Shown piece after piece: positions 1,851-62,142 of a DNA stretch of 64,000 nt (position 1 is its first letter; each line of letters opens with the position of its first letter). Origin of the DNA: Octopus sinensis (lineage: Eukaryota); NCBI RefSeq assembly GCF_006345805.1, contig NC_042998.1:90706001-90770000 (forward strand), written 5' to 3'. The notes under the pieces are model-generated. The model ran no database searches. It was not told where the DNA came from and worked only from the letters and a program-made list of their open reading frames with translations. The position numbers and the translations under genes were made by a program.

Positions 1851-1983
1851 ATATATGTATGTATATGCGTGTGCTGGCATGAGTAGGACAATTATGTGAT
1901 GATGATTTAAATCAATAAAATAAAAGTTAGTGAATTTTCTTGTGCCCTAATTCACTTTTTTTTTTTTCTCTCTCTCTCAATAG

Positions 1984-2963: not shown

Positions 2964-3101
2964 GAGCAACACATTAACATGCTTCAGTATGAAATTAAGT
3001 CAAAGACTATTTCTTTAGCTTACATCTTTTCTAAGCTTGAAGATGCTCAAAGAGATTTCCAGATTGAAGACTATTCTGTCAGTCAGAATACTCTAGATAA
3101 T
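2964..3101 (+). CDS. ABCA2: ABCA2-like exon (regulatory domain R2)
   Basis: Acceptor ttttcccctCAG at 2963, donor GTATGT at 3102, phase 0-0, 46 codons: EQHINMLQYEIKSKTISLAYIFSKLEDAQRDFQIEDYSVSQNTLDN. IEDYSVSQxTLD is the ABCA signature. Confidence 0.92.
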
Positions 3102-4149
3102 GTATGTATTACACCTTTACTTTGCTTGTCTTTTTGCTGTTACAAATTTCAGTATTGTTATGTTAGGAATTTTTTAGTTAGACATTTTCCAGATATTCCT
3201 GTAAAACTGCATGCAAAATTTGTTGAAATGAAACAGAAAATTTTAAAATATTACATTGAAAATTAAAACAATAATTCAGATATTTGTGGAGAATCATATA
3301 GTTTTATTATCTTTGACCACATGTGTTTATGGAAACAATTTTGGATTATGTATCTATTTGTAACAATTATAAAGTATATAAAAATGATGTACTTAGGAAG
3401 GTTCCTCATAAACTAATATTTTCTACTTTACTATTTTATATATGTACTCCTTGGTTTGTTAGAAAATATTTTACAAAACACTAATTTTCTTTTTTCCTCT
3501 CTTTAGAATGTTTTGTTGTTAACTTTGATTTTGTTATTACCATTCATCATCATCCAATCAGGTGATTTTCCCAGACCAATGCAACTCTTTCACACCAGAC
3601 ATCCTGATAAAGCAATGGCTCATGACTGTCAGGCCTGGTTACATTAGTCTTTTGCTCTCTAAAATAGCTCATCTGCACATTCCATGACTACAGATGATAT
3701 CAGTTGTTTGCCAACTGCACTTGTTGATCCTAGTCATTGATAATTTGTTGTCTATTCATCCACTCAGCAGCTAGTGATATTCACTATTGATTCAATAAGT
3801 TCATCTGAAATAGTTCACATCCACCATACTGTATCTCATGATGTCAATGTACCCTTGCTTAGGTGGTTACAAGCCCTTTAACCCATAGCTGGGACCCTGA
3901 CAGATGCAATGACTCCAGGTCAGAGTAGATCTAGAAGTGGCTAAGAGGTGGTTCCACACTTCTCAAAACCCTGGAACTCCTGAACTAGAGCCCCTCTACT
4001 TGATGCAGCTTAGTCATATCCATTAAGAAATATCATCTAAGAAGAAAATAGTTGTATGAATTTCCCTAGTGAAATAAAAACATAAAATACAAATTTTTAA
4101 TTAATCTAAGACCCTTGTTTATGACAAATTTTCATAAATTATTATTTAG

Positions 4150-23554: not shown

Positions 23555-23936
23555 GAAATCGATCAATGGAAATTGCAGATGTGTTACCAGTGCCGGTGGC
23601 ATGTAAGAGAACCTTCCGTTTCGCGACCGTTGCCAGCACCACCCCGTTTCGTGTCCGTTGCCAGCCTCGCCTGGCCCTCATGCCGGTGGCACATAAAAAG
23701 CACCATCCGTTCGTGGCCGTTTGCCAGCTCTGTCTGACACCTGTGCGGGTGGCACGTAAAAAGCACCCACTACACTCTCGGAGTGGTTGGCGTTAGGAAG
23801 GGCATCCAGCCGTAGAAACACTGCCAGATTTGACTGGGCCTGATGAAGCCTTCTGGCTTCACAGACCCCAGTAGAACCGTCCAACCCATGCTAGCATGGA
23901 AAACGGACGCTAAACGATGATGATGATGATGATGAT
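23555..23936 (+). mobile_element. Young RTE LINE 3' UTR fragment with (GAT)n tail
   Basis: About 6 differences over ~380 bp from the reverse complement of 55376-55760. Confidence 0.9.
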
Positions 23937-24768
23937 ATACACTGGACCCGGAGGAATAGCAATCCCAGAGGCACAATCAGTGCCTGACCTAGGTATTTAC
24001 ATGAGTGATGACGCAACCTTTTGTGTACATGTTGCTAAATTGGCAATGAAATGTAGACGACTGGCCGGATGGATCCTCAGAACCTTTAGAACAAGAGAAC
24101 AAGAAACCATGATGGTCCTCTGGAGGACACTTGTCCTAAGCCACTTTGACTACTGCTCTCAGTTATGGTCACCATCCAGTGTCAAGTTGATCACAGAGCT
24201 CGAGGCGATCCAACGTAGCTACACGAAGAAGATAGCCTCTATGCAGAATGTAAGCTACTGGGAAAGACTCAAGAGATTAAAACTATATTCCCTGGAGCGT
24301 AGGCGGGAAAGATATGCCATAATATACATCTGGAAGATCCTGGAGGGACGTGTCCTGAACTTTGGCATCGAGAGTTACGCAAATGCCAGAACTGGGCGCC
24401 ACTACGTGGTGCCTAGGACTCCAAACTTGCCATCAAGATGTAGGACAAGATTCTGTGATAGCCTGGGCTTCCGAGGCCCACAGCTCTTCAATATCCTCCC
24501 GAAGAACCTGAGAGACCTGCATGGGGTGGATGCAGATGTCTTTAAAATGAAGCTGGATCTCTTCCTGTCAGGTGTCCCAGATGAACCAACTTCACGGCAG
24601 GAGGAGCAGATGAGGGCAGCTGCATCGAACTCTCTCATGCACCAAATGGCAGTTGCTAGAAAGCTTTCGTGAAGTGAAACCAAGTAGCAACACCAAATGG
24701 CGGTGCCCCAGCATGGCCACAGCTCATAAGCTGAAACTAGAATCAATCAATCAATCAATCAATCAATC
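23937..24768 (+). mobile_element. Young 5'-truncated CR1/L2-group LINE; uninterrupted 245-codon C-terminal ORF2 and (AATC)7 tail
   Basis: DLGIYM, LVLSHFDYCSQLWSP, LEAIQRSYTKKI, LYSLERRRERY and GPQLFNILP are CR1-group C-terminal motifs. Stop at 24672, tail at 24741-24768. Confidence 0.88.
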
Positions 24769-32849: not shown

Positions 32850-34085
32850 ATGAGGACATTATCCGAATCACTGATCGCGAATCCTGGGTGTATGTTGTTT
32901 ACCTAAGGCTTTTAATTCTGTGCCACACAAAAGACTTATGGTGAAACTCTCTGCAATGGCTGTAAGAGACGATCTCTATAACTGGTTGAAGTACTTTATT
33001 ATCGGCCGAAAAGAGGTTGTCACAGTTCTAGGACAGCAATCTTCACCCTATGAGATGACATCTTGTGTACCACAGGAATCTGTTCGTGGCCCCCTTTTAT
33101 TTGTTGCATATATTAATGACATAGATACCAACTTAAAGAATGCCACAGTGCTGAAATATGCAGATGACATCAAGCTGTACCTCAAAATAAAGAGGTCAGA
33201 TCCTATACACTATAGATCTCTATTGCAATCAGACCTGGACACAATGCAGCATTGGATCATGGACTGGCAATTCAAGCTGGCTGTGGACAAATGTACCACC
33301 ATGCATTTTAAGAGGAAAAACCCAGCATCTACTTACTCCCTCCACAACACTAATCTCAAAAAGTCTTCTTGTGAATGTGACCTGGGTGTTATTGTCAACA
33401 GCGATTTGCGTTGGACAAAACACGTCGCTAAAATTGCCAAGAAGGCTGAGGGTGTCTTGGCATCACTCACCAAGTGTCCTTTGTGAGCTGCTCTCCAGCT
33501 ATCTATCTGCGGGTTTATATAGCTATGGTACGACCTCTCCTGGAATTTGCATCACCGGTCTGGAACCCCTATCTTGCCCAGGATATTAATCGTCTGGAAA
33601 ACATTCAGCAACGTGCAACCAAGAGAATACCCTCCATCAGGCATTTGCCATATTCTGAACACCTTACTTCCCTGGGCATGGATACATTGAAACTCCGACG
33701 TCTGGCAGCTGACTTGACAGACACCCATCTTACTAACAATAACTCTGAGTACCTTTTCAAACTCCACCCGTGGACATATTTACAAAGTCAGAAAACAGCA
33801 CAGCTCCCATGACTTTCGGAAACATTTTTTCATGCTAAGAGTTGCTGAAGCATAGAACAAACTGCTGGCATCAGTTGTTAGTTGTAGGAGCACTGCATCT
33901 TTCAAAACCTCCATGCTTCCTGAGATTCACCTGATTTTCTCCCCTCCATACACATGCAAGCATGTATCTGACTCATACACTGTTCGCTTTCCAGACATTT
34001 GTACATTACTGCATAGGCTTAATACGCACTTTTGACAAGTTGTGGTGCACCTGAGTACTGTATACAATAATTTCATTATTATAAA
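32850..34085 (+). mobile_element. CR1-group LINE 3' fragment (RT core and C-terminus), frameshifted
   Basis: KAFNSVPH, VPQESVRGPLLF, KYADDIKLY, DLGVIV and LEFASPVWNPY motifs. Frameshift near 33480. Confidence 0.88.
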
Positions 34086-44826: not shown

Positions 44827-47800
44827 AGCAATCATTCACAAGTCAGTAATCAACCCAGGGCTATAGATGAAGAAACTTGCCTAAGGTGCCATGCACTTTT
44901 CTGAATTAAATTTTTCCAGATTGATGATATTGATTTTTGTACCCCCACCTCCCCACTTCACCTCAATAAAATAGATATCAATAATAATGTTGATATTAAT
45001 CCATTTAGTTGGCAGTAAGTTAGTAGTCATTAAAGTGTTGGATAAAATACTTCATAGTATTTGTTCTGATTCTCTGACTGCAAATCCCACTGAAGTTAAC
45101 TTTATCATTTATCGTTTCAGGGTATATAAAATTTGCAAAATCCAGTCATTGGATTTGTTGAACTATTTTAGAGGATTAAGAAGAAAACTGCCTTATGTTA
45201 TCTGTTATGGTTTTTATATTCTGACAACAATGCTTGCAACAACACTGGTGCCATACTGTAATGGCCTTAAAGTAGTCACTTTCACCTGCTGCAATAGTAG
45301 TGTAGAGAAAGGAGGCTACCATGTACAAGAAACAACCATTTGTCTCCAAAAAATTTTACCCAGGCCTGTACGATCTTGTGAAGAGAAATGGTCATCCTAA
45401 ATGTACAGAGATCTCCAATTCATTCCTCTCCTAAGATCTCTCTTACAAATCTCTCCTAAAAAATTAGAAGCTTTCCTAAAAATTATGCACATGTGTACAC
45501 AAGTGCATCCATTATTTAAGTTGTCACTAAATATCACCGGAAATCTATTTTAAAATCTATTTTAAAAAGTTTAACATATGCTGTTGAATGCTAGTGTCAG
45601 CAATTAGATTATTGTCTAAGCACAATAAGAACTCTCCCAGAAGGCCCAGTCCTTGTTGTGGTATGATGGCTTGTATGCTTCAATGACACTGAGAGTTATG
45701 CCAGCAGAGTGCAAGCTCATGGTAGAGTCTCCCATTCTGTACAGGTCAAAGGATAGAGGCCAGAGTTATATGGATTCTTCTTTTCAAAGATGAAATAAGT
45801 TTGTGTAAGGTGAACACACCTAGCTAGGAAAAAGTACAGTTGCAGAAGCATCAGGGACAATCAAAACAAACAAGAAATATACAGGGCACCCTCTACCTTA
45901 TACTGAGGGTATAGGCCTGCCTGGAGTTCAGAACAGTGGAGAAAAGTCATCGAGGGTTTATTGCTGCATAGGGAGCAAAGGGTTTAAGTAAGCAACAATA
46001 AGAAGTACTATTTCAGGTAAAGTACTGCATCAATCTTTTGGAGGATTTTTTTATACCTTTTAGCTCCGAGAAAATGCAGTACTCATGACCCTTTGCAGGG
46101 CCTCCAAAACAGGTGGAAGGGAGATATCCTCAAATCAGAAGCTTGTCCTAAATGCTTGCAATATATTGGACTCCCTTAAGAACACCCAGGGTGCCAGGTA
46201 GTGGTGTTACACCAGATAACAGTTCAAGTCTATCACTCAAGTAGACCATGACATGACTTGAACTCACAGCACAAAGAAATGGAACAAATACCACATGGCA
46301 CCCTGATGACATTTTTATATTTGTACCATGACAGGATTTGAACTCAGAATACAAAAAGCTGAACAAATACTACAATACATCCAGTCTACACATTACTACT
46401 AATTCAACACCCATGATTGTCACTCTTTTATTGATCCTATATTGATGAAAAGTGAAGTTGAACTCAGTGGAATTAGAGCCCAAAGCCCCAGGAATCAGAA
46501 CAAGTACTGCAGGACATTTTATCTGATACGCTAATGATTTTACCAATTTGAGTGTACTTTTTGTCTTTTACTTGCTTCAGTTAATTTTGACTGTAGCCAT
46601 GCTGGAGCACTGCCTTGCAGGGTTTAGTCAAAGAAATTGACCTCAGTACTTATTTTAAGTTTGATACTTTATCAGTCTTTTTGCCAAACCACTAAGAAAC
46701 CAACAGTGGTTGTCAAGTGGTGGTAGGGAACAAACACACACATGCACGTGCACACATACAACAGGCTTCTACACAGTTTCCATCAACCAAATTCACTCAC
46801 AAGGCATTGGTCAACCCAAGGCTGGAGTAGAAGACACTTGCCCAAGGTAATCAGCAATTGGACTGAACTTGAAACCTCTTGGTTGCAGACTGAACTTCTT
46901 AATCACCCAGCCATGCCTGTTGAAGTAACCTAAGATAGTTTTTATTTTGCAATTTATTTTATTGATATATGTTCTTTTGGGAATGATTTCACTGATTTCA
47001 AATTTTTTTAATTAATTCTTTGTAGGTAAATGTTAAAGGAAAAGATAATAAATAATAAAAAGAAGAGATGCAAACTATAAACTCTACCTTGAAATTTTAT
47101 AACTTTTAAACTATTACTTTGAATAGCATGACTATTGAACAGGTTGCCAGCATTGAAGTTAATTTTGACAACACAAACTGAGAAATTTTCAGCCAATGAA
47201 AAGCCAGGCTGGTTCTGCTTTTGATTGGTAATTTAAAACATGATATTTTAATTAGCCTATCAATAAGTAAGCTGCATGCGGCATTGTGGACTACATTTAC
47301 ATATATTGTCTGCCATAAGAAACAAGCAGTTGTTGAGTAGAACATAGTTGAAGTCACACATAACAATACTATAAGAACAGGCATCAGGATTTAAAATTTG
47401 ATAACATTCAGAAGACCAAGCTATAAAGAACAACAGAAAGTAAGAATTGTTCATGTTGGTGTATTTCCCTTTTTAGTCGCTGACATTTTATATAAGTTAA
47501 ACTATAAAAAAAAATATCATTCAGCTGAATACTTTTGCTAGTTTTCTTTTTAAGGATGCTGTCATAGAATTTAGTTCCATTGAATACTTACAAATTGTTA
47601 GTTTAACTTTAATTCCTATCCTGTTAACTGAACAATATCAGACACAATATTTTCACTATTTTATTATTATTTTTGACTGATTATTTTAAAACAATCTCTG
47701 ACATGTTCTTATGTCGCTCCCAAACTGGCAAGCATCAGACCCCTATCAAAAATATTTGTGAAATTCTTTTGCTACCCACTCCACTTCCTTTATCAATTCT

Positions 47801-49290: not shown

Positions 49291-50948
49291 ACATGCCTAA
49301 CCATAGAAAAAATATTATCTTGCTTGGAAACAAGTGGAGGTTGGCAAAACGAAGGGCATCTTGCCACAAAAATTCTGCCTTAACAATTCTGTCTGACCCA
49401 TGCAAACATGGAAAAGTGAATGTTAAAGCAATGATGATGATGATGAAGATGATCAGTCCTCACTGGGCCTCAGATCTCTACATAACAAAATTGAATACTG
49501 CTTGCTCTCTACATTTAAACATTCCACCTTCAAACTTCTCTGCACCATGATCTGAAATGTAAGATTTTTTTTCTTCCCAGATCATGGAGGCTCGATTTAT
49601 CCAATGTTTATTTGCTTCCATTGTGGTCTGCATATTATGGTGAATTACATCTACCAATATTATGATGGATATCCAAGTCCCCAGAAACAGTTGTTCGACT
49701 TATAACACCTTAGATCTTCCCCTTTAATTTTCTCTGTCACTTATACTTTGTGGAAGTGTGATCTATTAATATATATATATCTATAAATTTATATTGAAAT
49801 AGTCATCATCTGAAAGCCTTCAGTCTTTGCTTTCTTTCTGCTTGCATGTATACATACATGTATATTTTGTATATCAAACCCAAGCAGTTATATTTTAATC
49901 TGTTTATCTACATAAATGTATATATAAATGTGTGTGGGGGTGTGTGTGTATGCTTGTGCATGCATGTGCATGTTCCGTGTTTGTACCCCACAAACACAGA
50001 ATCCATAATCTAGCAGTTCAGCTATTGACATCAATGGAATAAGTGCCAGACTTAATTTTTTAAAAATGTTCTGAGGTGAATTCATTCAACTAAATATTAT
50101 TCAAAGTGATGTCCCAGCATGGCCACAGTTTAATGACTGAAACAAGTAAAAGGACAGATAAAGGAAGGTTGAGAAAGTGGTTAATAACCTCTTCCCAAGT
50201 AGTAAGCTGCAAAACATCTGAAAGAAACTAAAGGTAGTTTATATCAATATACTGATGTGTTGTATGGTATTTTGTTTGGCACTCTATTGATGGTACCACA
50301 TCTCCACCATTCTTACACCATACTTATACCATACCATCACTAATACCACACCACTGCCATTACTGTACTACCTCCATCACCATTTCAGTTCTCTGACAGT
50401 TACTAATCCTATTCAAAAGCTCAATGGAATACTACTTCTTTATTAGGAGCATTGCTGCTGCTGCTGCACACACACACACACATGCACACGTGCGCGCACA
50501 CACACACACGCACACGTGCGCGCGCGCACACACATACACACACACACACACATTCTAGACTGCATTAAAAGAAAAAAAATATCAACTGACTGATTGCTAT
50601 TAGAATGCTTGTCACCAACACATTCCAAACTTGGGTTTACATATGTTCTGTGTCTTCTCTGTGATTTTTCTAGTACTACTACTATAGTGGTTTCTGTTCT
50701 TTGGGACTAGCTGGTCTCGTGTCACTTCTACTTAGACCTCCTCTAACTTGGTTCTTCTCCTCTTCTTGTCAGCTGTATTGTGTAGTAACCACTAAATACA
50801 GTCCATCATCTGTAGACTGTCACTCCTTCATCTCATTTACTTTCTAGATACATCACAGGCAAAAGCCATTTAAATTGTATTTCAATGTATTTTGTTTTTC
50901 TTTAACAGATATCATCAATTGACATTTCATTTTATTTATTAGAACAGG

Positions 50949-51009
50949 ATGGAAACTACTTTTCAAATTATTTTCATCTTATTGCTGTCAATTTGCTCTG
51001 CTGAAAAAA
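50949..51009 (+). CDS. Unrecognised glycoprotein, coding exon 1: signal peptide METTFQIIFILLLSICSA-EK
   Basis: Acceptor tttgtttttctttaaCAG at 50908, ATG at 50949, hydrophobic core with a CSA cleavage-like site, donor GTAAGT at 51010 (phase 1). Confidence 0.8.
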
Positions 51010-51199
51010 GTAAGTAAGATTCTAAATTTATAACATTTCTATGCTATCAGCAAAAATTTACAACTAAGTTTTTCAGTCTGTTTATAAATTGATTTGAGAT
51101 ATAATTTTCTTTCTTTGTTACCATTTTTTCCCCTGGTATAATGAATATATCAAACTGAACTTTTTACAAGTATCAAGGCTTTTAGAGTGTGAAGAACTA

Positions 51200-51500
51200 A
51201 AAACAATTTTTGCTCCAATACTGTATTGACTACTTACTCTTACCCACTCATTCTTGTGACCTGTCCAACAACTTATCATCACTCTCGTCCTTCTCCTGTC
51301 TGCTGTATCCTCATTACTATTCTACTGTTCTGCACTGGCTACTCATTTCTGACCCCCACTTCTTCCTCTCTTGTATTGTTGGTGTTGCCTACCTCTCTTT
51401 TTCTCACGCATTTTCCACCTCCATACTTTTCATGAAACTCCTGAACTCTCTTGCTGGGACTTTACCACCAGATGCATTTAATGTTTTGCCCTGGACGCAT
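51200..51500 (+). mobile_element. Old CR1/L2-group remnant in intron
   Basis: SLSSFSCLLYPHYY and SILFMKLLNSLAGTLPPDAF are distantly similar to the remnants at 25.9 and 27.2 kb. Confidence 0.4.
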
Positions 51501-52118
51501 AACCAGATAAGATTGTACATCTGTTAAGATGGTAAACAGAGAAGGATGTAGATACATACATATGAATTTATGTAGATAACAGGTTGGCAAATAAGTAGTT
51601 AAAGAAGAAGCTAGATAAATTGGTAAATAGTATCAAAATCTGGATAAATTGTTAAAGAAATATGTAAATTTATATGCCATAAGGAAATATGAGTACTTAC
51701 ATTTCAAAGAAAGCCATTCTTTAGATAATACTGTGTAAAACCTATTAGCTCAGTGATATCTTAAACATTTAAATGTTTCTCTTCCTGAAGAAATTGCTTT
51801 TCTCAAAATGTTAGAACTCATGCCTTCCTTGGCATTAAAACTAAACTATATTGTGAACTTTGTTAAATGATTTTTATCAACACAAATCATTATTAGTGTC
51901 CCTGCATTCTGATTCTTATTTGCTTGTAAATAAAAATTTAGAAGCATAATTTAGTAGGTAAGGATATACAAAGGTAGGAAGAGAGAGATAAAGGATATGC
52001 TATATAACTGGCTGGGTAGATCAATATAGTGATAGGAAGGTAGGTTTGTAGGTATACAGGTATTTATATTAGTAGTTATGCAGATATATATGTTAATAGA
52101 AATTAATTTCCATTGCAG

Positions 52119-52250
52119 ATTGTTACTACAAGAATGTTTCTATACTAACCCAACAAAACAAAACATTGTCATTTAATGGCTCTCCCTACAACTGTAAATG
52201 TGTTGATGACAATGATGGAAATGTCCCTTATCTTATGTGCACCAAGGACT
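52119..52250 (+). CDS. Unrecognised glycoprotein, coding exon 2: 4-Cys module (C-x23-CxC-x12-C; FnI/vWC-like spacing)
   Basis: Acceptor aatttccattgCAG, donor GTAAGT, 132 nt, phase 1-1, open frame NCYYKNVSILTQQNKTLSFNGSPYNCKCVDDNDGNVPYLMCTKD. Confidence 0.82.
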
Positions 52251-53938
52251 GTAAGTATTCATCAGAGCAATTTCCATTTATAGTAGAAGAGTTTTCAGTT
52301 GGTGAATTTATTTATTTTTTTCAGTCAAGGACCAGCAATTTGGCTTTCCATAAAATTTTAACTAAATCTAAGAATTTTAATCACCAGTTAATGCAAGTAA
52401 TTATACATAGCTGTTTCTTAAAAGTTATCAATGCACTGTAGGTGAACATTTAGATATTTTTAAGCCTGAGATTGAAGGCCAGAAGTAATTCTGTGACAAA
52501 GTCAGACACCCAAGTTTTTCACTCCTTTCCATGTCCTAGGTTTAGCCTAATTCTTTTTCACTAAGGTGTAGTATATTTTCATTATATATCCAGACAAGTA
52601 CAGCAACAAATTCTGTTCACATTACTTAAAAACTTTCCTTCTCAGTCTATCTCCTGAGAACTTGTGTTTAACTTCTAGCTCAAATTTGTATATTTGATGC
52701 CTCATACATGATTTCTTTCTTTCAATTCTCTGTAGATGATCTTCTTTCATTATTTATTTCTTTATTGCCCGCAGGGGATAAACATAGAGGGGACAAATAA
52801 GATCAGACAAAGGGATTAAGTTGATTACATCGACCCCAGTGCATGACTGGGACTTATTTAATCAACTCTGAAAGGATGAAAGGCAAAGTCGACCTCGGCG
52901 GAATTTGAACTCAGAACAAAATACTGGCAGATGAAATACCTCTAAGCATTTTGCCTGGTGTGCTAACGTTTCTACCAGCTCACCACCTTAAAAGTCTTCT
53001 TTCAATATTACAACTATGCAACAACAAACTTCTTACTTCTTGCACAGGCTTCACACACTCTGATATTGTGAACTGAATCTTATGACAAAAATCGAAGTTT
53101 TTTTGTTGCTCTTTTTTCCCCCTTTTAACAAAATCAGAACAGAAAATTTAGTGTTAAAGGATTTCATTCATTTACTTATTTGTTTGTTTCATTTAATGAC
53201 CATACTGGCATGGCTTAGACAGAGGAAATAGAGGCAGGATTTTTATGACCAAATGCACTTTCAATCCCAATCCTTATAGCAATTGAAGTATTTCTTTTTG
53301 GAAGCAGAGCTAGCAGACAATTTGTTGATTGGAAATGCCAACAAACATCACCATTTGCAGTCCAAACACAAATGGTAATGTTATTATTCATAGCCATGGC
53401 TCCGTGTAGTTTTGTAAACATTGATACATGCATGTGCACACATACACATGCACATGTATACACACACACACGCACACACATAATGGGCTTTTTTCAGTTT
53501 CTGTCTATCAAATTCCCTTGCAAGGCATTGGTCAGTCTGAGGATATAGTAGAAGACACTTGCAAAAGGTGTGGCACACTAGGACTGAACCTGAAGCTGCA
53601 TGATTGAGAAGCAAACTTCTTAACCCCATGACCATGTTTGTTTCATTTATATATTTCATTACATTGAACATATAAATGATTTCAACTATTTCCTTACATT
53701 AAACTTATAGATATTGCTGGTACAGTGACAGGAATCCCTTGCCTCAGAAACACGAAATTTAATGCTTCAAAATATTTTATAAATAGAACAGTAGAAACAA
53801 ATGATTTCACATAAAACAAATATTATTACTGTTGCCACTTAGCTTTCTAAATTCACCAGAGTTCTTGACTATTCCATTAATTAACATTTCATTATGATTG
53901 CTGCTTACAGTTTTAAATTCTATAATTTTTATTTTCAG

Positions 53939-55219
53939 CCTCAGAAAATGCTACTTTAAATATGATAATTATTCAAAATCAACCATCATCCAAGGCAGCT
54001 CAGAATGACTCTTCAAAGATTACATTACAAGAAAAAAATATCCAGCAATCTAATAACTCTGTGGTGCAAGCTGATGGCTCAAGCAATAGCTCTGTTTCAA
54101 ACTCAAACAAAACTGTCAATTACTGTAAAAACTCCACTGTTTCTAATGATACAAATGTGAGTCCTGTGACAGATACCCAACATTTCAATTTTGAGACTGA
54201 AGACAAAGCTCCAGAAAGCAATGTTTCAACTGGAAATAATTTAGAAGTTACAAATGATACAGCTGTAAATACATCAAGTAACTCAATCCAACACATAAAC
54301 AATAACACAACAGAAATTTTAAATAGTAGTGTAAAAACTGGAGATCATCAACTTGTTAATGCATCTAGCAATGTTACTTCAAGTTTTAGTAAAAAGGAAA
54401 CTGAAAGTAAATCAGATAACCAGGTGAATATGTCAACTAGGGGAAATACAACAAGAGAAAATGGCACAGCAGTAAGAAATAGTGAAGAAACAACTATGAA
54501 AAATGTCAGTTCTTCAGATGGAAAAATAACAAGGGAAATAAGAACAGTGAATGATTCAAATATTGCCAATGGAGAAAATGTAGAAAAGGGTCCTAACTCT
54601 ACCAGTACAGGCCAAGGGCAAAATATTTCAATGACCCAACATACAAATGACACTGACAAAAACCTTGATAATCTTCCAGAATCATCCACAGTCAAAAACT
54701 TTGTAGCACTTGAAGCAGAAAGTTTCCAGGAAGAATTAACAAACTTCAGCAAGAGGGGTGACATGCCAAACAAGACTGCTACTAATGAAACTATAAACAA
54801 TGATCAACAAACTATAAATGGTACTACTGTGAAAAATGATAGTGCTGAAGCTGTCACACCAAACACAAAAAGTAAGATCAAAAACGTAAATGGTTCGCAG
54901 TATGCAGTCAGGAGTACAGCTGAAATTTCCAACCCTTCTGCTGCTGATGAAACTAAATATAAGAACAACAAGGCAAATGCAACAGTGTCAAATAAGACTA
55001 ATGCAGAAAGAGACAATGGTACAAAGAATGGGACCAATTTTTCAACAAATACCACTGTGGCCAAACATAATATGAGTTCTCCTCTCATGAGTAACTTGAA
55101 TTTGGTGAGTCTGACTTTAAGGGAAATATTGTCTCTTGAAATAACTACCCAAGCAAACAATCCAACATTGATGAAGAAAAATAATATTTCCAAAGCAGCT
55201 ACAGGCAATGTTTCCCTTG
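53939..55219 (+). CDS. Unrecognised glycoprotein, coding exon 3: 427-codon Asn/Ser/Thr-rich region with ~39 N-X-S/T sequons
   Basis: Acceptor tataatttttattttCAG at 53938, in frame with the 53962 ORF, donor GTATGT at 55220, 1281 nt, phase 1-1, no stops in very AT-rich DNA. Confidence 0.88.
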
Positions 55220-55375
55220 GTATGTATGAAAGATTTTGAAAGAAATTCATAATTTATTCTGCATTTTTTCTTTTAGTCTTTAGATTTGTTATTGCTGCAT
55301 TGAACCAAAACAACATTGGAGTATATCAGTGTACATTGCCAGTAAATTATTCTTTATTGTTCTGTTAAAGAAGTC

Positions 55376-57259
55376 ATCATCATCATCATCATCATTTAGC
55401 GTCCGTTTTCCATGCTAGCATGGGTTGGACGGTTCTACTGGGGTCTGTGAAGCCAGAAGGCTTCATCAGGCCCAGTCAAATCTGGCAGTGTTTCTACGGC
55501 TGGATGCCCTTCCTAACGCCAACCACTCCGTGAGTGTAGTGGGTGCTTTTTACGTGCCACCCGCACTGGTGCCAGACAGAGCTGGCAAACGGCCACGAAC
55601 GGATGGTGCTTTTTATGTGCCACCGGCACGAGGGCCAGGCGAGGCTGGCAATGGACACGAAACGGGGCGGTGCTGGCAACGGTCGCGAAACGGAAAGTTC
55701 TCTTACATGCCACCGGCACTGGTAACACATCTGCAATTTCCATTGATCGATTTCCATTGATCGATTTCGATTCTGATCCTCACTTGCCTCAATGGGTCTT
55801 CACAAGCAGAGTTTCGATATGCCACCGGCACTGGTAGCACATCCGCAATTTCCATTGATCGATTTCGATTCTGATCCTCACTTGCCTCAACACGTCTTCA
55901 CAAGTAGAGTTTTGTGTCCCAAGAAGGGAAGGTATGCATACGTAGGCTGGCTCCATCCCATGTAGAAGGCCACGGGTTGTGGACTCACTTGTCCTGCCGG
56001 GTCTTCTCGCGCACAGCACACTTCCAGAGGTCTCGGTCTCTAGTCATTTCCTCAGTGAGACCTAAAGTTCGAAGGTCGTGCTTCACCACCTCGTCCCAGG
56101 TTTTCCTGGGTCTGCCTCTTCCACAGGTTCCCTCAACCGCTAGGGTGTGGCACTTTTTCACACAACTATCTTCATCCATTCTCGCCACATGACCATACCA
56201 GCACAAACGTCTCTCTTGCACACCACAACTGATGCTTCTTAGGTCCAGCTTTTCTCTCAAGGTACTTACACTCTGCCGAGTGTGAGTACCGGCATTACAC
56301 ATCCATCGGAGCATACTGGCTTCATTTCTAGCGAGCTTACGCATATCCTCAGCAGTCATGGCCCATGTTTCACTGCCATGTAGCATGGCTGTTCGTACAC
56401 ACGCATCATACAGTCTGCCTTTCACTCTGTGCGAGAGGCCTTTTGTCACCAGCAGAGGTAAGAGCTCTCTGAACTTTGCCCAAGCTATTCTTACTCTAGC
56501 AGTTACACTTTCAGCACACCCGCCCCCGCTGCTGACTTGGTCACCTAGGTAACGGAAACTATCAACTATTTCTAGTTTTTCTCCCTGGAAAGTGACGGAA
56601 GTTGGTCTCAGAGCATTTTCAGTGTTTATTGTTCCTGAGCATCTGCCACATACAAAAACCATCTTCCTAGTTAGCCTTCCTTTGACATTGCTGCATCTCT
56701 TATGTGTCCATAGCTTACACTTGGTGCATCTTATAGAGTTTCTACCTACACCTTTTCTACAGATCGAGCAGGGCCATCTACCTGAAGGTGTTTGTGATTT
56801 GTCTACCTTCCTACTGATTACGACTTTGGTTTTAGCTAGATTGACTCTGAGGCCCTTCGATTCTAATCCTTGTTTCCACACCTGAAACTTCTCCTCCAGT
56901 TCTGATAGCGACTCAGCAATTAGAGCAAGGTCATCAGCATAGAGGAGCTCCCAAGGGCATCCTGTCTTGAATTCCTCCGTTATTGCCTGGAGGACTATGA
57001 TAAATAGGAGGGGGCTGAGTACTGAGCCTTGGTGGACCCCTACCTCTACCCGGAATTCTTCACTGTACTCACTTCCAACCCTCACCCTACTAGCGGCGTC
57101 CCTATACATGGCCCGCACAGCTCTCACTAACCATTCATCTATCCCTAGTTTTCTCATTGCCCACCAGATAAGGGATCGGGGGACCCTGTCGAAGGCTTTC
57201 TCCATGTCAACAAAAGCCAGGTACAGGGGCTTATCTTTGGCTAGGTATTTCTCCTGCAG
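55376..57259 (-). mobile_element. Young 5'-truncated RTE LINE, antisense in the intron after exon 3
   Basis: (CAT)n tail at 55376, ~600-bp 3' UTR, intact ORF to the truncation point near 57259. Confidence 0.93.
55985..57259 (-). CDS. RTE ORF2 fragment: RT core, embedded PHD-type finger, thumb and C-terminus
   Basis: LAFVDMEKAFDRVP, GVHQGSVLSPLLF, LLYADD, FRYLG, LHGSETW and GRGRPRKTW. No stop over ~424 codons. Confidence 0.9.
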   Translation of the reverse strand: MQEKYLAKDKPLYLAFVDMEKAFDRVPRSLIWWAMRKLGIDEWLVRAVRAMYRDAASRVRVGSEYSEEFRVEVGVHQGSVLSPLLFIIVLQAITEEFKTGCPWELLYADDLALIAESLSELEEKFQVWKQGLESKGLRVNLAKTKVVISRKVDKSQTPSGRWPCSICRKGVGRNSIRCTKCKLWTHKRCSNVKGRLTRKMVFVCGRCSGTINTENALRPTSVTFQGEKLEIVDSFRYLGDQVSSGGGCAESVTARVRIAWAKFRELLPLLVTKGLSHRVKGRLYDACVRTAMLHGSETWAMTAEDMRKLARNEASMLRWMCNAGTHTRQSVSTLREKLDLRSISCGVQERRLCWYGHVARMDEDSCVKKCHTLAVEGTCGRGRPRKTWDEVVKHDLRTLGLTEEMTRDRDLWKCAVREKTRQDK

Positions 57260-58675
57260 TTTCTCAAAATCATTATTTCTAATTCTGAGATGGAATCAGA
57301 AATTTGTATGGAAGAAGTAATAATAATCCATTAAATTGATCCCAAGATGAAGTGCAAAAATAATCCTTATAAAATCCCCCCCAAAATCTGAACTCAGAAT
57401 ATAAAGAAATATAGCAAAACATTATAAGGTATTTTAGACAATCACTAAAGCAGAAAACAGTGGTTTGTAGAAACTGTAGAAAGTTAAACTGAATATCTAA
57501 TGGCCTTTAGTTGCTTTTTATTGCTAAATTCAAACCTTAATATGGTTAACTTTACTTTCTTTCTAAGATTGATATTGAAAAAAAACAAAACAAAAGCAGT
57601 CAAATATTGGATCAATCAGATTGACTGCAATCTTCTTCCAAAATTTGTGTCTTTGAGCCAAAATAATAACTTATGCTAAAGTTAAATAGATATGATAATG
57701 ACAAAAATATTAAACTCACATACAAAATCATTTAATCTAACAAACATAACAACTGTTGAATTTGCCTTTCTTTGAAAGGATTAATAGATATTTACCATAC
57801 AAGGTCTACTCAATTAAAATCCTTCCTGACAAATTTATGACCTTCCACCAATAAAAGAAATTAATATGAACCTAGAGAGCATGACTCTCTTAGAATTCCT
57901 CTCCACCCTAATCTATTACATCCTCCATTTCCTCTTTCCCCCACCTAACAATTCACTCTATCACTTTCCTACTCTGTCCTCCCATTTTTCTTAATAACCC
58001 TTGACACTGATCCCTTCACTCTCCCTTGTTCTTTGCCATACTAACTACTTAATGCTTACTGTCACTCCCTCCACAGCCATCCAATTGTAACAATAAATCT
58101 GGTCCTCTCCTCTCACTTACCTCCCCTACTTAGAATCATTGCATGCTCTCTCCTTTATTTTCCCTCAGCTGTAGAAAACATTTCAGGCACCTTAACCTGA
58201 AACAATCTTCACTAGTGCTAATGTCACAAAAAAAAAGCACCCAGTCCACTCTGTAAAATGGTTGGCATTATGAAGAGGTTCCAGCTATAGAAATCATGCT
58301 AAGTAAACATTGGAGCATGACATAGTTCTCCAGCCCATCAGGTCCTGTCGAACCAGCCAGCCCATGCCAGCAGAGTAGCTGACATTAAATCCTGGGGTCG
58401 ATTTGTTCAACTAAAGGCAGTGCTCCAGCATGGCCACAGTCAAATGACTGAAACAAGTAAAAGAATAAAAGAATAGATACACATACAAACCAATTTTAAC
58501 TGTCAACTGTTCAAGATGCCTCAAGAAATGGTTTGGTTATGTAATTCACATTATATAATATCATTATATAATATCATTGTGAACAAATAAATAGACATGC
58601 TGTCTAAATATATGTAGCATAGTTTGAACAAAAACAACTCTATTCATATTTTTCATTCTCTCTCTATCTCTCTAT

Positions 58676-58727
<52 letters not shown>

Positions 58728-58968
58728 CAAAATGGAACAAGAATGCAAGACATCTGGACAGCATAAGGTTTCACAATTCACAGAGGTCTCAAAATAATGG
58801 AAAGGACCTTCTTGTGTATATAAGGCTTTATACAATATATCTTAGAGTCTTCCCATGTTTAAATCCTACATTGGCTATAAGTAGGTCTTTGTAAAAGGAA
58901 TACATTAAGATTGCAACAGAAATTTCTTAATGTTTTCCTTAATTAAATACTTCACAAAATATTGTTAG

Positions 58969-59055
58969 TATCGAGCTGTTTTTATTCATCTCCAACTGTT
59001 TTGGAAGACCATCTCAATGGAAAACTAGCAAAATCTGTGAATTGTTCAACTGATA
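58969..59055 (+). CDS. Unrecognised glycoprotein, probable coding exon 4 (VSSCFYSSPTVLEDHLNGKLAKSVNCSTD)
   Basis: Acceptor aatattgtTAG at 58968, donor GTAAGT at 59056, 87 nt, phase 1-1, open in the required frame, two Cys. Confidence 0.62.
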
Positions 59056-60479
59056 GTAAGTAGCTACTAAAAATAGTTTTAAATTAATTTTCTTGTGTTG
59101 AGATTTGTTCAATGAGTTATTGAATATTAATTGGCAATAGGAACAGAATTATCATTATATTTTAACTAGGCAACTGATTAAAATCTTGGATCTAATATCC
59201 CCAAAGTGAATAATTTGAAAGCACTAAAGCAATTCTCCCCAAACTCATAAGAATTATGAGCCTTTAAAATCCATTGAATTACTTTAAGTGTCATGAACCT
59301 GTTGATAGTATTTTTTTCCTTTTCTTTTTCCATCCATAAGTGGCTTGTAACAAGAGGTAAATTAAGAGTTGGGCTTTACCAGTTTAGGAAGTATATTTAG
59401 ATGTGTGCACATAAGAAGGTTTGAATGTATAAATGCATGTTTTACATAAAGGTAACACTAAAAATCAGGAGGTATGCTTTTGGTTAACAAACATAATTTA
59501 TTCCTTGCTCACACATGAAGTAGGTAGCACAACAGAGATAAGTGTACAAGACACTAGGGTGTAGGAGGCATGGGTTAATTCCTTAATGCACATCAAGGTA
59601 GTTAGCTCCAGTACTTGGCTGCAAATCTAAAATATCCAATAAGTTTTGAAGTGGTAGTGAGGTGAGGTAGAAATCCCATAGTGTGTCGAGCTAGACAAGC
59701 CACAAGCTTGTCAATAGATTAGTGCCTACATCTGAATGGGATAAAGCAAAGCAGCTACGAAAGGGAACCAGATGTTAATGTTCTGACATTTAGACAGTAA
59801 CTGGATAAAACACCTTTGAAAAGCGCATGCTATTACTCTGGGTGGAAGTTGTCGTGTGTATTCCTCTGCCGTTAGCTTTCAAGAGTGGTGGAACGCAGCA
59901 CCAATGTGCTGCAATGCTGGAGCAAAGTAATTCGACTGCCCTGCCAATGTTACAGGCTCATTATGTTTGCTTCAATGTTCCTGACTCCATGGCCTGCTTT
60001 GGCATGGTTTCTATGGCTGGATGCCCTTCCTAACACCAACCATTTTAAAGAGTGTACTGGGTTTTTTTTTATTTGTGGTACCAGCCCTAGTGAAGACGCC
60101 ATGTAAATTGCAAAACTAAGATCTCTATCAGGTAAGTAGAGCTACGGTAGAGAAAAAGGCAGCTTTTACACTCAGTGATGAAAAGTTAGAGTATTCTTGC
60201 TGGATAAGAAGTAAATGGCTGCTCATATTATACAAGAGTGGATTATCAGTATGGAGTTGGAAGGAGAAATAAAGTTGGTGGAGACGAGGTGTCAGGGTGG
60301 GCCCTGGGGACAGAAGAACAGTGTGTATGCTTATGTGTGTGTATATGTACACACACACACACACACACACTTCGATATAAAGAGAGAGAAAGAGAGAGAG
60401 AGAGAGATGAGATGAGATGGGGTGAGAATGAAAGGTCAGTGAATAACAAAAATATATCAGTTTCTAAATACTATTTTTT

Positions 60480-61700
60480 GCGTCAGGGCAGGTTTTGCCA
60501 TGGGCAGACTGGTCTTCTGCAGCATCATATATCACCAATCAGCAGTAATTTGTCATCTCCTCCATGAGATGTTGCAACTTTCACCAACTTGTCCCATGTC
60601 TTCCTTGGTTTCTCTCTTCAGCAAGTTCCTCTAATTTGGAGTGCTTGGCACTTCCTCATGCATTATCTATCTTCCATATGCATCATATTCTCATACAAAT
60701 GCTGTTTTCTCTCTTGCACATTACACCTAATTCCTCCCTTACTTAGTTTTCCTCTCAACTCGTTTCTGCTTTAGTATTCATGCACACAAACTTAATCTTT
60801 ACAAGCATTTTGTATTCAAGGCCCATATTTCACTATTATCCAGCATAACAATTCTAACATAAGCATCACACCCTTAGATTTGAGGGAAAAGATCTTCATT
60901 GCCAGCTAAGTTTATAGCTGAACTCATGGTTAACAATCAGTTTCCATAGGGGCTATCAGATTACCAAACATGGAACCTACATCTACAAATACCAACTATA
61001 GCAACTTACTTTTAGCTAAGTATTTCTCTTGCACTCGTCTCATGAAGATGATTACATCTGTAGTAGCTTCTTCAGGGCACAAAACCAAACAGCATCATAT
61101 TTATTATGTTGTTCAATAGATAACTTCATTGAAGAACATTAGTGCTATGACTCTCCATGGTCCTCCAATTTGATGTCTCTATAATTTCTTTTCTAAAAGA
61201 CATCTCCTTTGCCCTTGTAGCAGTTTGTAATGATACTGCTACACCAGTCATTGGCTAAGATGCCTTCCTGTATTACTTGATTAACTATGCAGCTGATTAT
61301 GAATCCTATTTTGAGTATCTCAGCAACTATCAATGATAAGCAAGTAGCTTTCTTTACTTTCATGTTCTTATTCATTGTCTAACACACTATAGTCAATGTG
61401 AATTGTTGGTCGTTTTGAGGGTCAGCATGAGGCATTCCCTCTTTATCCCATGCATTCTCTAGATTTAACAGCATCTCATCATAGCAGATCTTTGCTTCTT
61501 TCTGATCATCAGAAACAATAGCATGTGTACCTTCAGAATTTTTAATATGCTTCTCCCTAGTGATACCTTGCTTTCTTTAACACACTCTCTTCCCAATCGC
61601 AATGTGTTAACATTTTATGTTAAGGGTTATAAGATGTCATAGTGGCATTCAACTGTGAGTGTACAGTTCCATGTGGCTGAAACAGCAGTAATCCAATGAA
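60480..61700 (-). mobile_element. Older decayed copy of the RTE family
   Basis: Minus-strand LLNLENAWDKE and DWCSSIITNCYKGKGD match the RTE pre-RT region. Confidence 0.7.
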
Positions 61701-61726
61701 GATGACATAACTTCTCTTTTGTCATT

Positions 61727-61728
61727 CA

Positions 61729-61807
<79 letters not shown>

Positions 61808-62034
61808 TTATCGATCTATCTATCTATCTATCTATCTGTCTGTCTGTCTGTCTACACATACATCCATCCATACATACACCCATACATACATATACTCATA
61901 CATACATACATACACTCATACATACATACATACACCCATACATACATACACCCACACATACATACATGCATCCATACATACATGCATCCATACATACACC
62001 CATACTTACACACATACCTACATACATACATACA

Positions 62035-62069
<35 letters not shown>

Positions 62070-62085
62070 GTGTGTGTGTGTGTGT
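61727..62085. repeat. Compound (TATC)n/(TGTC)n/(TACA)n/(TG)n microsatellite
   Basis: Direct reading. Confidence 0.95.
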
Positions 62086-62125
62086 AAAGGTTATAATATT
62101 CTGTTTTTATTTTTATTTTTTACAG

Positions 62126-62142
62126 AAACCAATGTTATCTGA
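62126..62142 (+). CDS. Candidate terminal exon of the glycoprotein gene (KTNVI* if phase 1)
   Basis: Strong acceptor ttttatttttattttttaCAG at 62125. The frame is unverified, and the gene may instead continue past the window. Confidence 0.25.

What the first reader, a model, noticed from the sequence alone, without database searches (positions are those of the whole stretch)
50949..59055. Unrecognised secreted protein with an extreme N-glycan brush (about 43 sequons in ~520 aa)
Seen: four exons splice in frame as signal peptide, 4-Cys module, 427-aa N/S/T-rich region, and a 2-Cys segment. In exon 3, 39 of 71 Asn (55%) sit in N-X-S/T sequons, against about 18 expected from its 26% Ser+Thr content. 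Unlike mucins it is Pro-poor and non-repetitive. Inference: selection for N-linked rather than O-linked glycan density, giving a heavily glycosylated extended spacer between small disulfide modules. Possible roles are mucus, egg coat, skin or sucker matrix, or a receptor stalk. I recognise no family. This is the strongest candidate for an undescribed system in the window.
Basis: partly seen in the sequence, partly recalled or inferred. Interest (0 to 1): 0.7.

Follow-up and report, generated by a model that had tools for sequence, protein, structure and literature searches.

The report
Octopus-only secreted protein, N-glycan brush

Summary
The sequon excess is real. Exon 3 (53939-55219) has 39 N-x-S/T sequons on 71 Asn, against 18.2 +/- 3.4 in composition-preserving shuffles (z about 6; 0 of 20,000 reach it). 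The excess occurs only at the +2 offset, and 49 other open stretches in the window show none.

Exons 1-3 match the annotated Octopus models: O. bimaculoides LOC106875936, O. sinensis XP_036371174/8 and O. vulgaris CAI9718096/7.

Every annotated isoform splices exon 3 to a micro-exon at 62126-62142 (ETNVI-stop).

The product is a soluble secreted protein:
- a signal peptide;
- an alternatively spliced 43-aa four-Cys beta-finger, perfectly conserved against O. bimaculoides;
- a 427-aa region predicted disordered (pLDDT about 29), with dN/dS of 0.63-0.70.

Individual sequons turn over, but their density is held at 7.5-9 per 100 aa in three lineages.

An exhaustive HMMER search of 1.84 billion representatives found no relative outside the Octopus cluster, and Pfam gave no match.

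Best reading: a lineage-restricted, N-glycan-based analogue of a mucin. Glycan occupancy, expression and tissue are untested here.

The parts
47410..47439 (+). 3' end of an upstream, probably non-coding, exon; donor gtaaga at 47440
   Evidence: The O. vulgaris model CAI9718096 (P0001) reads ...RRPSYKEQQK|NRMETTF. tblastn places RRPSYKEQQK at 47410-47439 and the sequence shows the donor. It lies in the best-conserved non-coding block, 46561-47704, 95% identical to O. bimaculoides. The exon start was not determined.
50943..51009 (+). Start-codon exon: acceptor ttattag|AACAGG, ATG at 50949, signal peptide METTFQIIFILLLSICSA|EK
   Evidence: Kyte-Doolittle 19-residue maximum of 1.46 at residues 1-19. 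19 of 20 residues identical in O. bimaculoides.
52119..52250 (+). Exon 2, a 132-nt frame-preserving cassette. It encodes a four-Cys module, C-x23-C-x-C-x12-C, carrying three sequons (NVS, NKT, NGS).
   Evidence: Skipped in the X2 isoforms of O. sinensis (P0006) and O. bimaculoides (P0003). No nonsynonymous changes over 104 nonsynonymous sites against O. bimaculoides. 40 of 43 residues identical in a third species. AlphaFold2 of the module alone gives pLDDT 80.4 and a three-stranded sheet.
53939..55219 (+). Exon 3, 427 codons. Asn/Ser/Thr-rich region predicted disordered, with 39 sequons.
   Evidence: sequon statistics. (pLDDT 23-32 throughout). (dN/dS 0.63-0.70). The ORF is kept open in three lineages, with only in-frame indels.
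54355..54423 (+). 69-nt GT..AG segment inside exon 3 (aa NASSNVTSSFSKKETESKSDNQV, two sequons). Variably present.
   Evidence: Present in the window, in the O. vulgaris models and in the third species. Absent from the O. bimaculoides genome and from both O. sinensis RefSeq isoforms.
54658..54750 (+). Well-conserved segment KNLDNLPESSTVKNFVALEAESFQEELTNFS (aa 305-335) with a single sequon, NFS at its C-terminal end. An RGD follows at 54754-54762.
   Evidence: Conservation profile and alignment. The sequon-free gap length itself is not statistically unusual. RGD is kept in O. bimaculoides but reads RDD in the third species.
55072..55155 (+). Conserved hydrophobic segment MSSPLMSNLNLVSLTLREILSLEITTQA (aa 443-470). 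It holds the only predicted helix in the protein.
   Evidence: AlphaFold2 helix at 423-448 in P0002 numbering, which is 446-471 here, at low confidence. Second-highest hydropathy in the protein, 0.92, below transmembrane level. Nearly invariant in three lineages.
55220..62125 (+). Intron 3. It holds a minus-strand reverse transcriptase + PHD ORF (55985-57205) and other lineage-specific insertions.
58969..59055 (+). Not supported as an exon.
   Evidence: Absent from all annotated isoforms. No O. bimaculoides counterpart. One of 181 comparable open segments in the intron; its acceptor tract is pyrimidine-poor (11 of 20), like exon 2's but unlike exon 3's or the terminal exon's. A species-specific cassette exon cannot be excluded without RNA data, because 87 nt would keep the frame.
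62126..62142 (+). Terminal coding micro-exon: (G)AA ACC AAT GTT ATC TGA, giving E-T-N-V-I-stop. The 3' UTR follows, with the first AATAAA at 62274.
   Evidence: The orthologous position in O. bimaculoides is L001 ~18271-18285, reading ETNAI.

Best explanation
This is the Octopus sinensis/vulgaris orthologue of O. bimaculoides LOC106875936. It is a single-copy gene found so far only in Octopus.

The product is a soluble secreted protein of 496 aa (477 aa and 51.6 kDa mature, pI 5.6).

Proposed mechanism; every step after the signal peptide is inferred:
1. The N-terminal signal directs the chain into the ER.
2. Almost the whole chain is predicted unfolded, so oligosaccharyltransferase can reach most of its 42 sequons, about one every 11 residues.
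3. The polypeptide then leaves the cell carrying at least its own mass in N-glycans.
4. Crowding of the glycans stiffens and extends the chain into a hydrated, protease-shielded bottle-brush. This works like a mucin domain, but with N-linked glycans on a Pro-poor, non-repetitive backbone.
5. Three better-conserved elements are the likely contact points for partners or self-association: the alternatively spliced four-Cys beta-finger, the segment at aa 305-335, and the hydrophobic helix at aa 446-471.

Selection appears to act on sequon density rather than on individual sites.

The most likely role is an extracellular coating, lubricating or glycan-presenting component of a secretion such as mucus, an egg or gamete coat, or a gland product. 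The tissue is unknown.
For: - Gene model: three independent annotations agree on it and on the exon-2-skipped isoform. The CDS is complete.
- Localisation: a signal peptide and no other hydrophobic segment or GPI-type tail.
- Sequon excess: z about 6, confined to the +2 offset. It is absent from 49 control ORFs in the window. It is present in each orthologue at z 5.6-6.3.
- Density: 8.8 sequons per 100 aa. HIV-1 gp120, described as showing extreme selection for sequons, has 5.02 (PMC2920574).
- Turnover with the density held: 29 of 36 and 28 of 38 sequons are kept in register, with 4 new ones in each comparison.
- Neutral simulation: undirected substitution at the observed divergence predicts a net change of -13.4 +/- 3.1 sequons against -6 observed (P 0.014) for the third species. 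For O. bimaculoides it predicts -6.9 +/- 2.5 against -3 (P 0.08).
- Disorder: full-length AlphaFold2 gives mean pLDDT 29.2.
- The Cys module is far more constrained than the brush: 0 nonsynonymous changes, against about 5.6 expected at the exon-3 dN of 0.054.
- No relatives: 1.84 billion representatives searched with HMMER and only the gene's own cluster found. Pfam finds nothing.
- Precedent: in the disordered PTPRA ectodomain, dense glycosylation shapes and shields the chain (PMC10369406).
Against: - No transcript, protein or glycan data could be examined here.
- None of the collection's clusters holds a transcript-derived copy; the only Logan members are genomic contigs.
- The accessions do not occur in the supplements of two O. 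vulgaris skin-mucus proteome papers or one ink proteome paper. This is weak evidence, because heavy glycosylation hides peptides.
- Constraint on the brush is weak: dN/dS 0.63-0.70, Fisher P 0.03-0.13 against neutrality.
- Sequon positions are no better conserved than other positions against O. bimaculoides, 88.7% versus 87.9%.
- The orthologues are close relatives, so their z-scores are not independent.
- Occupancy will be incomplete. Some sequons are 1-5 residues apart. Six have Asp at X. The three in the last 55 residues are all NXS, whereas STT3B prefers NXT there (PMC3613688 abstract).
- Spacing is only marginally more regular than random placement: CV 0.745 against 0.918, P 0.08.
- With 25% Ser+Thr, O-glycosylation is not excluded.
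Confidence: 0.6

Rival explanations
1. A fast-evolving reproductive or gamete-coat protein. The N-glycans are the recognition ligands, not a physical brush. Rapid sequence change reflects sexual selection. This overlaps with the main explanation on biochemistry and differs on purpose.
For: The gene is lineage-restricted and has a high dN/dS of 0.63-0.70. Sequons turn over. In octopods, genes dating to the shared octopod ancestor are most highly expressed in male reproductive tissues (PMC7656900).
Against: There is no expression data. dN/dS is below 1 in all three pairs, so positive selection is not shown. No ZP, lysin-type or other reproductive domain was found.
Confidence: 0.2
2. The sequon excess is an inherited relic, not something maintained by selection. 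An ancestral short repeat that contained N-x-S/T expanded and then decayed. The three lineages are simply too close for the excess to have eroded.
For: Sequon positions are no more conserved than other positions against O. bimaculoides. Overall constraint is weak. Self-comparison gives several weak internal matches, the best at 39% identity over 41 aa. The orthologues are not independent samples.
Against: No periodicity and no tandem repeat were detectable. Losses are fewer and gains more frequent than undirected substitution predicts: net P 0.014 for the third species and gains P 0.018 for O. bimaculoides. Sequon Asn is kept 35/38 against 22/30 for other Asn in the most distant comparison (P 0.05).
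Confidence: 0.12
3. It is mainly an O-glycosylated, mucin-type protein. The 25% Ser+Thr are the functional sites and the Asn sequons are secondary.
For: Ser is 13.0% and Thr 12.2% of a chain predicted to be disordered. In the PTPRA ectodomain, O-glycans outnumber N-glycans and contribute more to the solution structure, and can even sit within sequons (PMC10369406).
Against: Pro is only 2.5% and there are no PTS tandem repeats. The specific +2 coupling of Asn to Ser/Thr has no explanation under O-glycosylation alone.
Confidence: 0.1
4. It is an annotation artefact or a non-functional ORF: an A-rich low-complexity stretch that happens to be open.
For: No transcript-derived copies are in the protein collection. 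There is no family and no confident fold for the bulk of the protein.
Against: A 427-codon ORF stays open in 35-40% GC DNA across three lineages at dS up to 0.18, with only in-frame indels. The flanking exons have consensus splice sites, a signal peptide and a perfectly conserved Cys module. An offset-specific sequon excess has no reason to exist in non-coding DNA.
Confidence: 0.04
5. It is a membrane-anchored receptor stalk or a longer multidomain protein whose downstream exons, including the reader's exon 4, were missed.
Against: The segment is absent from the O. bimaculoides locus. All models stop at ETNVI/ETNAI. There is no transmembrane or GPI signal anywhere in the model.
Confidence: 0.04

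Closest known systems
Secreted mucins (PTS domains)
   Same: Secreted. Long chain predicted disordered and rich in hydroxy-amino acids. The glycan mass is expected to rival the protein mass. Small Cys-containing module at one end. Fast-evolving backbone, with selection plausibly acting on glycan density.
   Different: No tandem repeats and only 2.5% Pro. The enriched signal is the N-x-S/T sequon, pointing to N-linked rather than O-linked glycans. No VWD, CK or SEA domains. About 0.5 kb of protein-coding repeat-free sequence rather than kilobases of repeats.
HIV-1 gp120 glycan shield (benchmark for sequon selection)
   Same: Sequon number far above the compositional expectation. Sites shift while the total number is held.
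   Different: gp120 has 5.02 sequons per 100 aa and about 3.8-fold enrichment on a folded domain (PMC2920574). Here there are 8.8 per 100 aa and about 2.1-fold enrichment on a chain predicted disordered, because the composition itself is already Asn/Ser/Thr-rich. There is no homology.
Disordered, densely glycosylated ectodomain of PTPRA
   Same: An intrinsically disordered extracellular chain whose shape and shielding are set by closely spaced glycans (PMC10369406).
   Different: PTPRA's ectodomain is short and membrane-anchored. It carries 7 N-sites but more than 30 O-sites, and the O-glycans dominate. The Octopus protein is soluble, about four times longer, and enriched specifically in sequons.
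Dentin sialophosphoprotein / SIBLING proteins (the UniRef name for this cluster is 'Dentin sialophosphoprotein-like')
   Same: Secreted, acidic, disordered and heavily modified. An RGD is present in three of the four Octopus sequences.
   Different: Only 2 DSS and 1 SSD triplets and no Asp-Ser-Ser repeat array. No sequence relationship was found by HMMER. The RGD is not kept in the third species. The name reflects composition only.
Dictyostelium DDB_G0286901 (the RefSeq name for the O. sinensis protein)
   Same: Asn-rich low-complexity composition.
   Different: It was not recovered as a relative in either search. The longest Asn run here is 3. The name comes from a compositional best hit.
Fibronectin type I 'finger' module (for exon 2 only)
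   Same: About 43 aa, four Cys in a C...CxC...C arrangement, and a small antiparallel sheet. These modules give the best geometric matches to the AlphaFold2 model: 2cku TMq 0.76 at rmsd 1.9 A, and 3gxe_B TMq 0.68.
   Different: The Foldseek E-values of 2-3 are not significant, and the top-ranked hits by E-value are unrelated proteins. There is no Pfam fn1 hit even at E<=10. The PROSITE FN1 pattern is not met, and the C3-C4 loop is 12 residues rather than 6-9. The pattern and the view that FnI modules are chordate proteins come from my own knowledge.
Lineage-specific ('novel') octopod genes
   Same: No relatives outside a narrow clade. Secreted. Weakly constrained.
   Different: Papers treat that class in bulk (PMC7656900). 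No paper in the searchable library mentions this gene's identifiers.

Membership tests
N-glycoprotein of the secretory pathway | N-terminal signal peptide or other ER-targeting signal | tested here: met
   METTFQIIFILLLSICSA|EK: a hydrophobic core of 11-12 residues, small residues at -3 and -1, KD19 of 1.46, conserved in O. bimaculoides. This is a heuristic reading; no SignalP run was available.
N-glycoprotein of the secretory pathway | N-{P}-S/T sequons in the lumenal or extracellular part | tested here: met
   42 sequons in the 477-aa mature chain. The excess has z about 6 and is offset-specific.
N-glycoprotein of the secretory pathway | Sequons actually occupied by glycans | not testable with these tools
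   Needs a PNGase F or Endo H shift and glycoproteomics.
Mucin (PTS-domain glycoprotein) | Pro/Thr/Ser-rich tandem repeats | tested here: not met
   Pro 2.5%. TRF finds only two 19-20 nt micro-repeats, and self-BLAST gives no repeat unit.
Mucin (PTS-domain glycoprotein) | Dense O-GalNAc glycosylation | not testable with these tools
   Ser+Thr are 25%, so it is possible. No predictor or data were available.
Mucin (PTS-domain glycoprotein) | Flanking VWD/C8/TIL/CK or SEA domains | tested here: not met
   No Pfam family at E<=10 for the full protein.
DSPP / SIBLING | Asp-Ser-Ser repeat array (DPP part) and detectable homology | tested here: not met
   2 DSS and 1 SSD triplets. No hit outside Octopus in the HMMER search.
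Fibronectin type I module (exon 2) | Match to Pfam fn1 or the PROSITE FN1 pattern | tested here: not met
   No fn1 hit at E<=10. The regex for the PROSITE pattern, taken from my own knowledge, returns false.
Fibronectin type I module (exon 2) | FnI fold with 1-3 and 2-4 disulfides | tested here: inconclusive
   The AF2 model has pLDDT 80.4. TMq is 0.68-0.76 to FnI modules, but Foldseek E is 2-3 and nothing reaches E<=0.001. Disulfide pairing could not be read from the model with these tools.
Taxonomically restricted (orphan) gene | No detectable homologue outside a narrow clade | tested here: met
   Word-indexed search of 5.8 billion proteins: four clusters, all Octopus. Exhaustive profile HMMER over 1.84 billion representatives: only its own cluster. 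The module-only search found only the third Octopus-like species. Unannotated copies in other cephalopod genomes could not be searched.
Taxonomically restricted (orphan) gene | ORF maintained by selection in more than one species | tested here: met
   The ORF is open in three lineages with in-frame indels only. dN/dS is 0.63-0.70 for exon 3 and 0 for exon 2.
Taxonomically restricted (orphan) gene | Evidence of transcription or translation | not testable with these tools
   Only annotation models exist. No transcript-derived sequences are in the collection, and there is no hit in three proteome supplements.

The most novel reading that the evidence does not exclude
This protein could be the first recognised example of an 'N-mucin'. 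That would be a secreted bottle-brush glycoprotein built on a non-repetitive, Pro-poor disordered chain, in which N-linked rather than O-linked glycans supply the brush. Selection would hold sequon density at about one per 11 residues while individual sites turn over. Such a gene would be an Octopus-lineage invention, perhaps tied to a cephalopod-specific secretion such as a sucker, skin, egg or gamete coat.
Probability: 0.3. Interest if true: 0.6.

Novelty: new variant of a known kind. Interest (0 to 1): 0.4.

Why it matters
If most of the sequons are occupied, this would be one of the most densely N-glycosylated polypeptides described, at 8.8 potential sites per 100 residues against about 5 for HIV gp120. 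It would also be a natural case of reaching mucin-like physics through the N-glycosylation pathway.

The gene gives a clean, single-copy system for two questions: how selection maintains a bulk property (glycan density) without conserving sites, and how a young lineage-restricted gene acquires a function.

It may also be a useful scaffold for studying how oligosaccharyltransferase copes with closely spaced sites on an unfolded chain.

If the sites are poorly occupied, or the gene is barely expressed, it is only a compositional curiosity in an annotated orphan gene.

Tried and rejected
Checked against seven annotated isoforms and the O. bimaculoides locus; rejected as a conserved exon.
- **Distant homology.** A full-length word-indexed search, a module-only search and an exhaustive profile HMMER search found nothing outside Octopus. 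Pfam gave only a sub-threshold DUF4251 match to the module (E 0.031, 14.8 bits against a cut-off of 27), which I dismissed. PDB sequence search gave one chance-level hit at E 0.18.
- **Full-length structure.** pLDDT of 29, too low for a fold search. Foldseek on the module had no significant match.
- **Site-wise conservation of sequons.** No signal against O. bimaculoides and a borderline one against the third species.
- **Regular spacing of sequons.** A trend only, P 0.08. The long sequon-free gaps are not longer than chance, P 0.67. I therefore base the 'handles' on conservation, not on gap length.
- **Amphipathicity of the C-terminal helix.** It is not among the top hydrophobic-moment windows.
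- **AAT over AAC in sequon Asn codons.** P 0.008, but explained by CpG avoidance before G-starting codons and absent in the third species.
- **Local paralogues.** None in the window or in 28 kb of the O. bimaculoides locus.
- **Literature.** Gene and protein identifiers appear in no paper text and in none of three O. vulgaris proteome supplements.

Full report
**What the window is.** The region is AT-rich animal DNA full of retroelements. At the two positions where the O. vulgaris and O. sinensis proteins differ, the window agrees with O. sinensis.

**Gene model.** Exons 50949-51009, 52119-52250 and 53939-55219 have canonical borders and join in frame. They reproduce the annotated proteins.

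- It has no stop codon and ends on a donor site.
- All seven annotated isoforms end ...GNVSL-ETN(V/A)I.
- That tail is encoded by a micro-exon at 62126-62142, behind a strong polypyrimidine acceptor.
- With this exon the CDS is complete: 1491 nt, 496 aa plus stop.

In the orthologous O. bimaculoides locus (L001) synteny is continuous through exons 1-3 and most of intron 3. Intron 3 contains 181 frame-preserving open AG..GT segments of 60-240 nt.

Upstream, the O. vulgaris model uses an exon ending at 47439 that splices to an acceptor at 50943. Exon 2 is skipped in the X2 isoforms of two species. There is no paralogue in the window or in the 28-kb O. bimaculoides locus.

**The sequon observation.** It is correct and robust.
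- Exon 3 has 71 Asn, 39 of them in N-{P}-S/T. Shuffles give 18.2 +/- 3.4, and none of 20,000 reaches 39.
- The excess sits only at the +2 offset. The mirror motif and offsets +1, +3, +4, -1 and -3 are all at expectation.
- Gln, Asp and Lys show no such coupling to Ser/Thr.
- Shuffling within 20-residue blocks changes nothing.
- Forty-nine other open stretches in the same window carry 43 sequons against 38.1 expected.
- Under the corrected model the mature protein has 42 sequons in 477 residues, or 8.8 per 100. HIV-1 gp120, described as showing extreme selection for sequons, has 5.02 per 100 (PMC2920574).
- The enrichment over composition is about 2.1-fold, lower than gp120's roughly 3.8-fold. 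The composition here is already 16.6% Asn and 25% Ser+Thr.

**Evolution.** Besides O. bimaculoides, a third, unnamed species is represented by genomic Logan contigs from runs SRR11869384/390/391/394. They cover exon 3 (L002, 87% nucleotide identity) and exon 2 (L004).

The exon-3 ORF is open in all three lineages, with only in-frame indels. dN/dS is 0.63-0.70 in all three pairs, so constraint is weak.

Exon 2 has no nonsynonymous change against O. bimaculoides, where about 5.6 would be expected at the exon-3 rate. In the third species 40 of its 43 residues are identical.

Each orthologue keeps the sequon excess at z 5.6-6.3, but they are close relatives and not independent. Individual sequons are not better conserved than other residues against O. 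bimaculoides (88.7% versus 87.9%). In the more distant comparison, sequon Asn is kept 35/38 against 22/30 for other Asn (P 0.05).

A simulation of undirected substitution at the observed divergence predicts a net loss of 13.4 +/- 3.1 sequons for the third species. The observed net change is -6 (P 0.014). For O. bimaculoides the prediction is -6.9 +/- 2.5 against -3 observed (P 0.08), and the observed gains exceed expectation (P 0.018). Together these results are modest evidence that density, rather than particular sites, is what is maintained.

**Architecture.**
- The N-terminus is a typical signal peptide. No other segment approaches transmembrane hydropathy and the tail is not GPI-like. The product is therefore soluble and secreted, not a receptor stalk.
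- AlphaFold2 on the four-sequence alignment gives mean pLDDT 29.2. The only regular element is a helix over PLMSNLNLVSLTLREILSLEITTQAN.
- That helix and the segment KNLDNLPESSTVKNFVALEAESFQEELT are among the best-conserved parts of exon 3 and carry few sequons. The sequon-free gaps themselves are no longer than chance.
- The 43-residue exon-2 module, folded alone, gives pLDDT 80.4 and a three-stranded sheet.
- Foldseek finds nothing significant for the module. The best geometric matches are fibronectin type I fingers (TMq 0.68-0.76, E 2-3). These share the C...CxC...C pattern, but neither Pfam nor the PROSITE pattern supports membership. I treat this as a lead only.

**Relatives.** There are none outside Octopus.
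- The word-indexed search returned four clusters, all Octopus.
- The exhaustive profile search of 1.84 billion representatives returned only the query's own cluster.
- Pfam and PDB sequence searches were empty or at chance level.
- The database names 'dentin sialophosphoprotein-like' and 'DDB_G0286901' reflect composition. There is no DSS repeat array and no Asn run longer than three.
- No paper in the searchable library mentions the gene's identifiers. They are absent from the supplements of three O. vulgaris secretion proteome papers.

**How it most likely works.**

*Shown:* a conserved, single-copy, spliced ORF with a signal peptide, a constrained Cys module, a long body predicted to be disordered, and an offset-specific, lineage-maintained sequon excess.

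*Inferred:* the unfolded chain is glycosylated at most of its sequons in the ER and is secreted carrying at least its own mass in N-glycans. The crowded glycans extend, hydrate and shield the chain, as shown for the disordered PTPRA ectodomain (PMC10369406) and as in mucins. The Cys finger, which alternative splicing can include or skip, and the two conserved segments provide attachment or self-association.

The biological setting is open. Mucus, an egg or gamete coat, or a gland secretion are all possible. The observation that octopod-age genes peak in male reproductive tissue (PMC7656900) makes a reproductive role a serious alternative.

**Verdict.** One exon of the model, and with it the 'spacer between two disulfide modules' picture, is wrong. 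No family membership could be found. This is a new variant of a known kind, a heavily glycosylated disordered secreted protein built on N-sequons. It lies in a gene that is already annotated but uncharacterised. Occupancy, expression and tissue all remain untested, so I score interest as moderate.

Noticed in passing
window 54355-54423: A 69-nt GT..AG segment inside exon 3 (23 aa, two sequons). It is present in the window, in the O. vulgaris models and in the third species. It is missing from the O. bimaculoides genome, where the junction reads CAACTT|GTGAAT between GT(T/G)AAT direct repeats. It is also missing from both O. sinensis RefSeq isoforms. In the third species the 3' AG reads CAAG, so it could not be spliced in register. 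Most simply this is a slippage deletion in O. bimaculoides, and the RefSeq 'intron' may be homology-guided rather than real.
   Followed up: partly
window 54754-54762: An RGD tripeptide (aa 337-339) lies two residues after the conserved aa 305-335 segment. It is kept in O. bimaculoides but reads RDD in the third species. It may be a chance occurrence or a young integrin-binding site.
   Followed up: partly
window 55985-57205 (minus strand), within 55376-57260: An intact-looking 406-aa ORF with reverse transcriptase (RVT_1, E 6e-19) and a PHD finger. It lies in a block of intron 3 that has no syntenic match in O. bimaculoides, so it looks like a lineage-specific retroelement insertion.
   Followed up: partly
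In O. bimaculoides about 0.8 kb of unalignable sequence stands in its place, so there has been a large indel since the species split.
   Followed up: partly
window 46561-47704: The best-conserved non-coding block near the gene: 95% identity to O. bimaculoides, against 90-93% for the introns. It contains the upstream exon ending at 47439 and is a candidate promoter or 5' UTR region.
   Followed up: no
window 16291-16410: The O. vulgaris model CAI9718096 begins with an exon here, 34 kb upstream, which adds 52 residues in front of the signal peptide. The other isoforms and species start at METTF. This extension would bury the signal peptide and is probably a prediction artefact or non-coding 5' exons.
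   Followed up: partly
window 1940-2272 and 2856-3266 (+): Two exons encode the ABCA1-like C-terminal R1 regulatory domain (PF23321, E 2.5e-14 for the second). They are the 3' end of an ABCA-type transporter gene and the upstream neighbour.
   Followed up: partly
window ~9370-11340 (+); 32875-33810 (+); 23914-24669 (+): Retroelement remnants. There is a Ty3/gypsy-type pol with integrase zinc-binding and core domains (10575-11339), and another RVT_1 reverse-transcriptase ORF (32920-33486). An open 251-aa ORF at 23917-24672 has no Pfam match.
   Followed up: partly
window 50110-50150 and 58386-58475: Copies of a short dispersed element (…cagcatggccacagt…aatgactgaaacaagtaaaag…). It also recurs several times in the O. 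bimaculoides locus, so it is probably an abundant octopus SINE.
   Followed up: no
window 53941-55218: Sequon Asn uses AAT 33:6 over AAC, against 17:15 for other Asn (P 0.008). AAC is followed by G only once in 25 cases, and sequon middle residues often start with G, so CpG avoidance explains the bias. It is not seen in the third species.
   Followed up: yes
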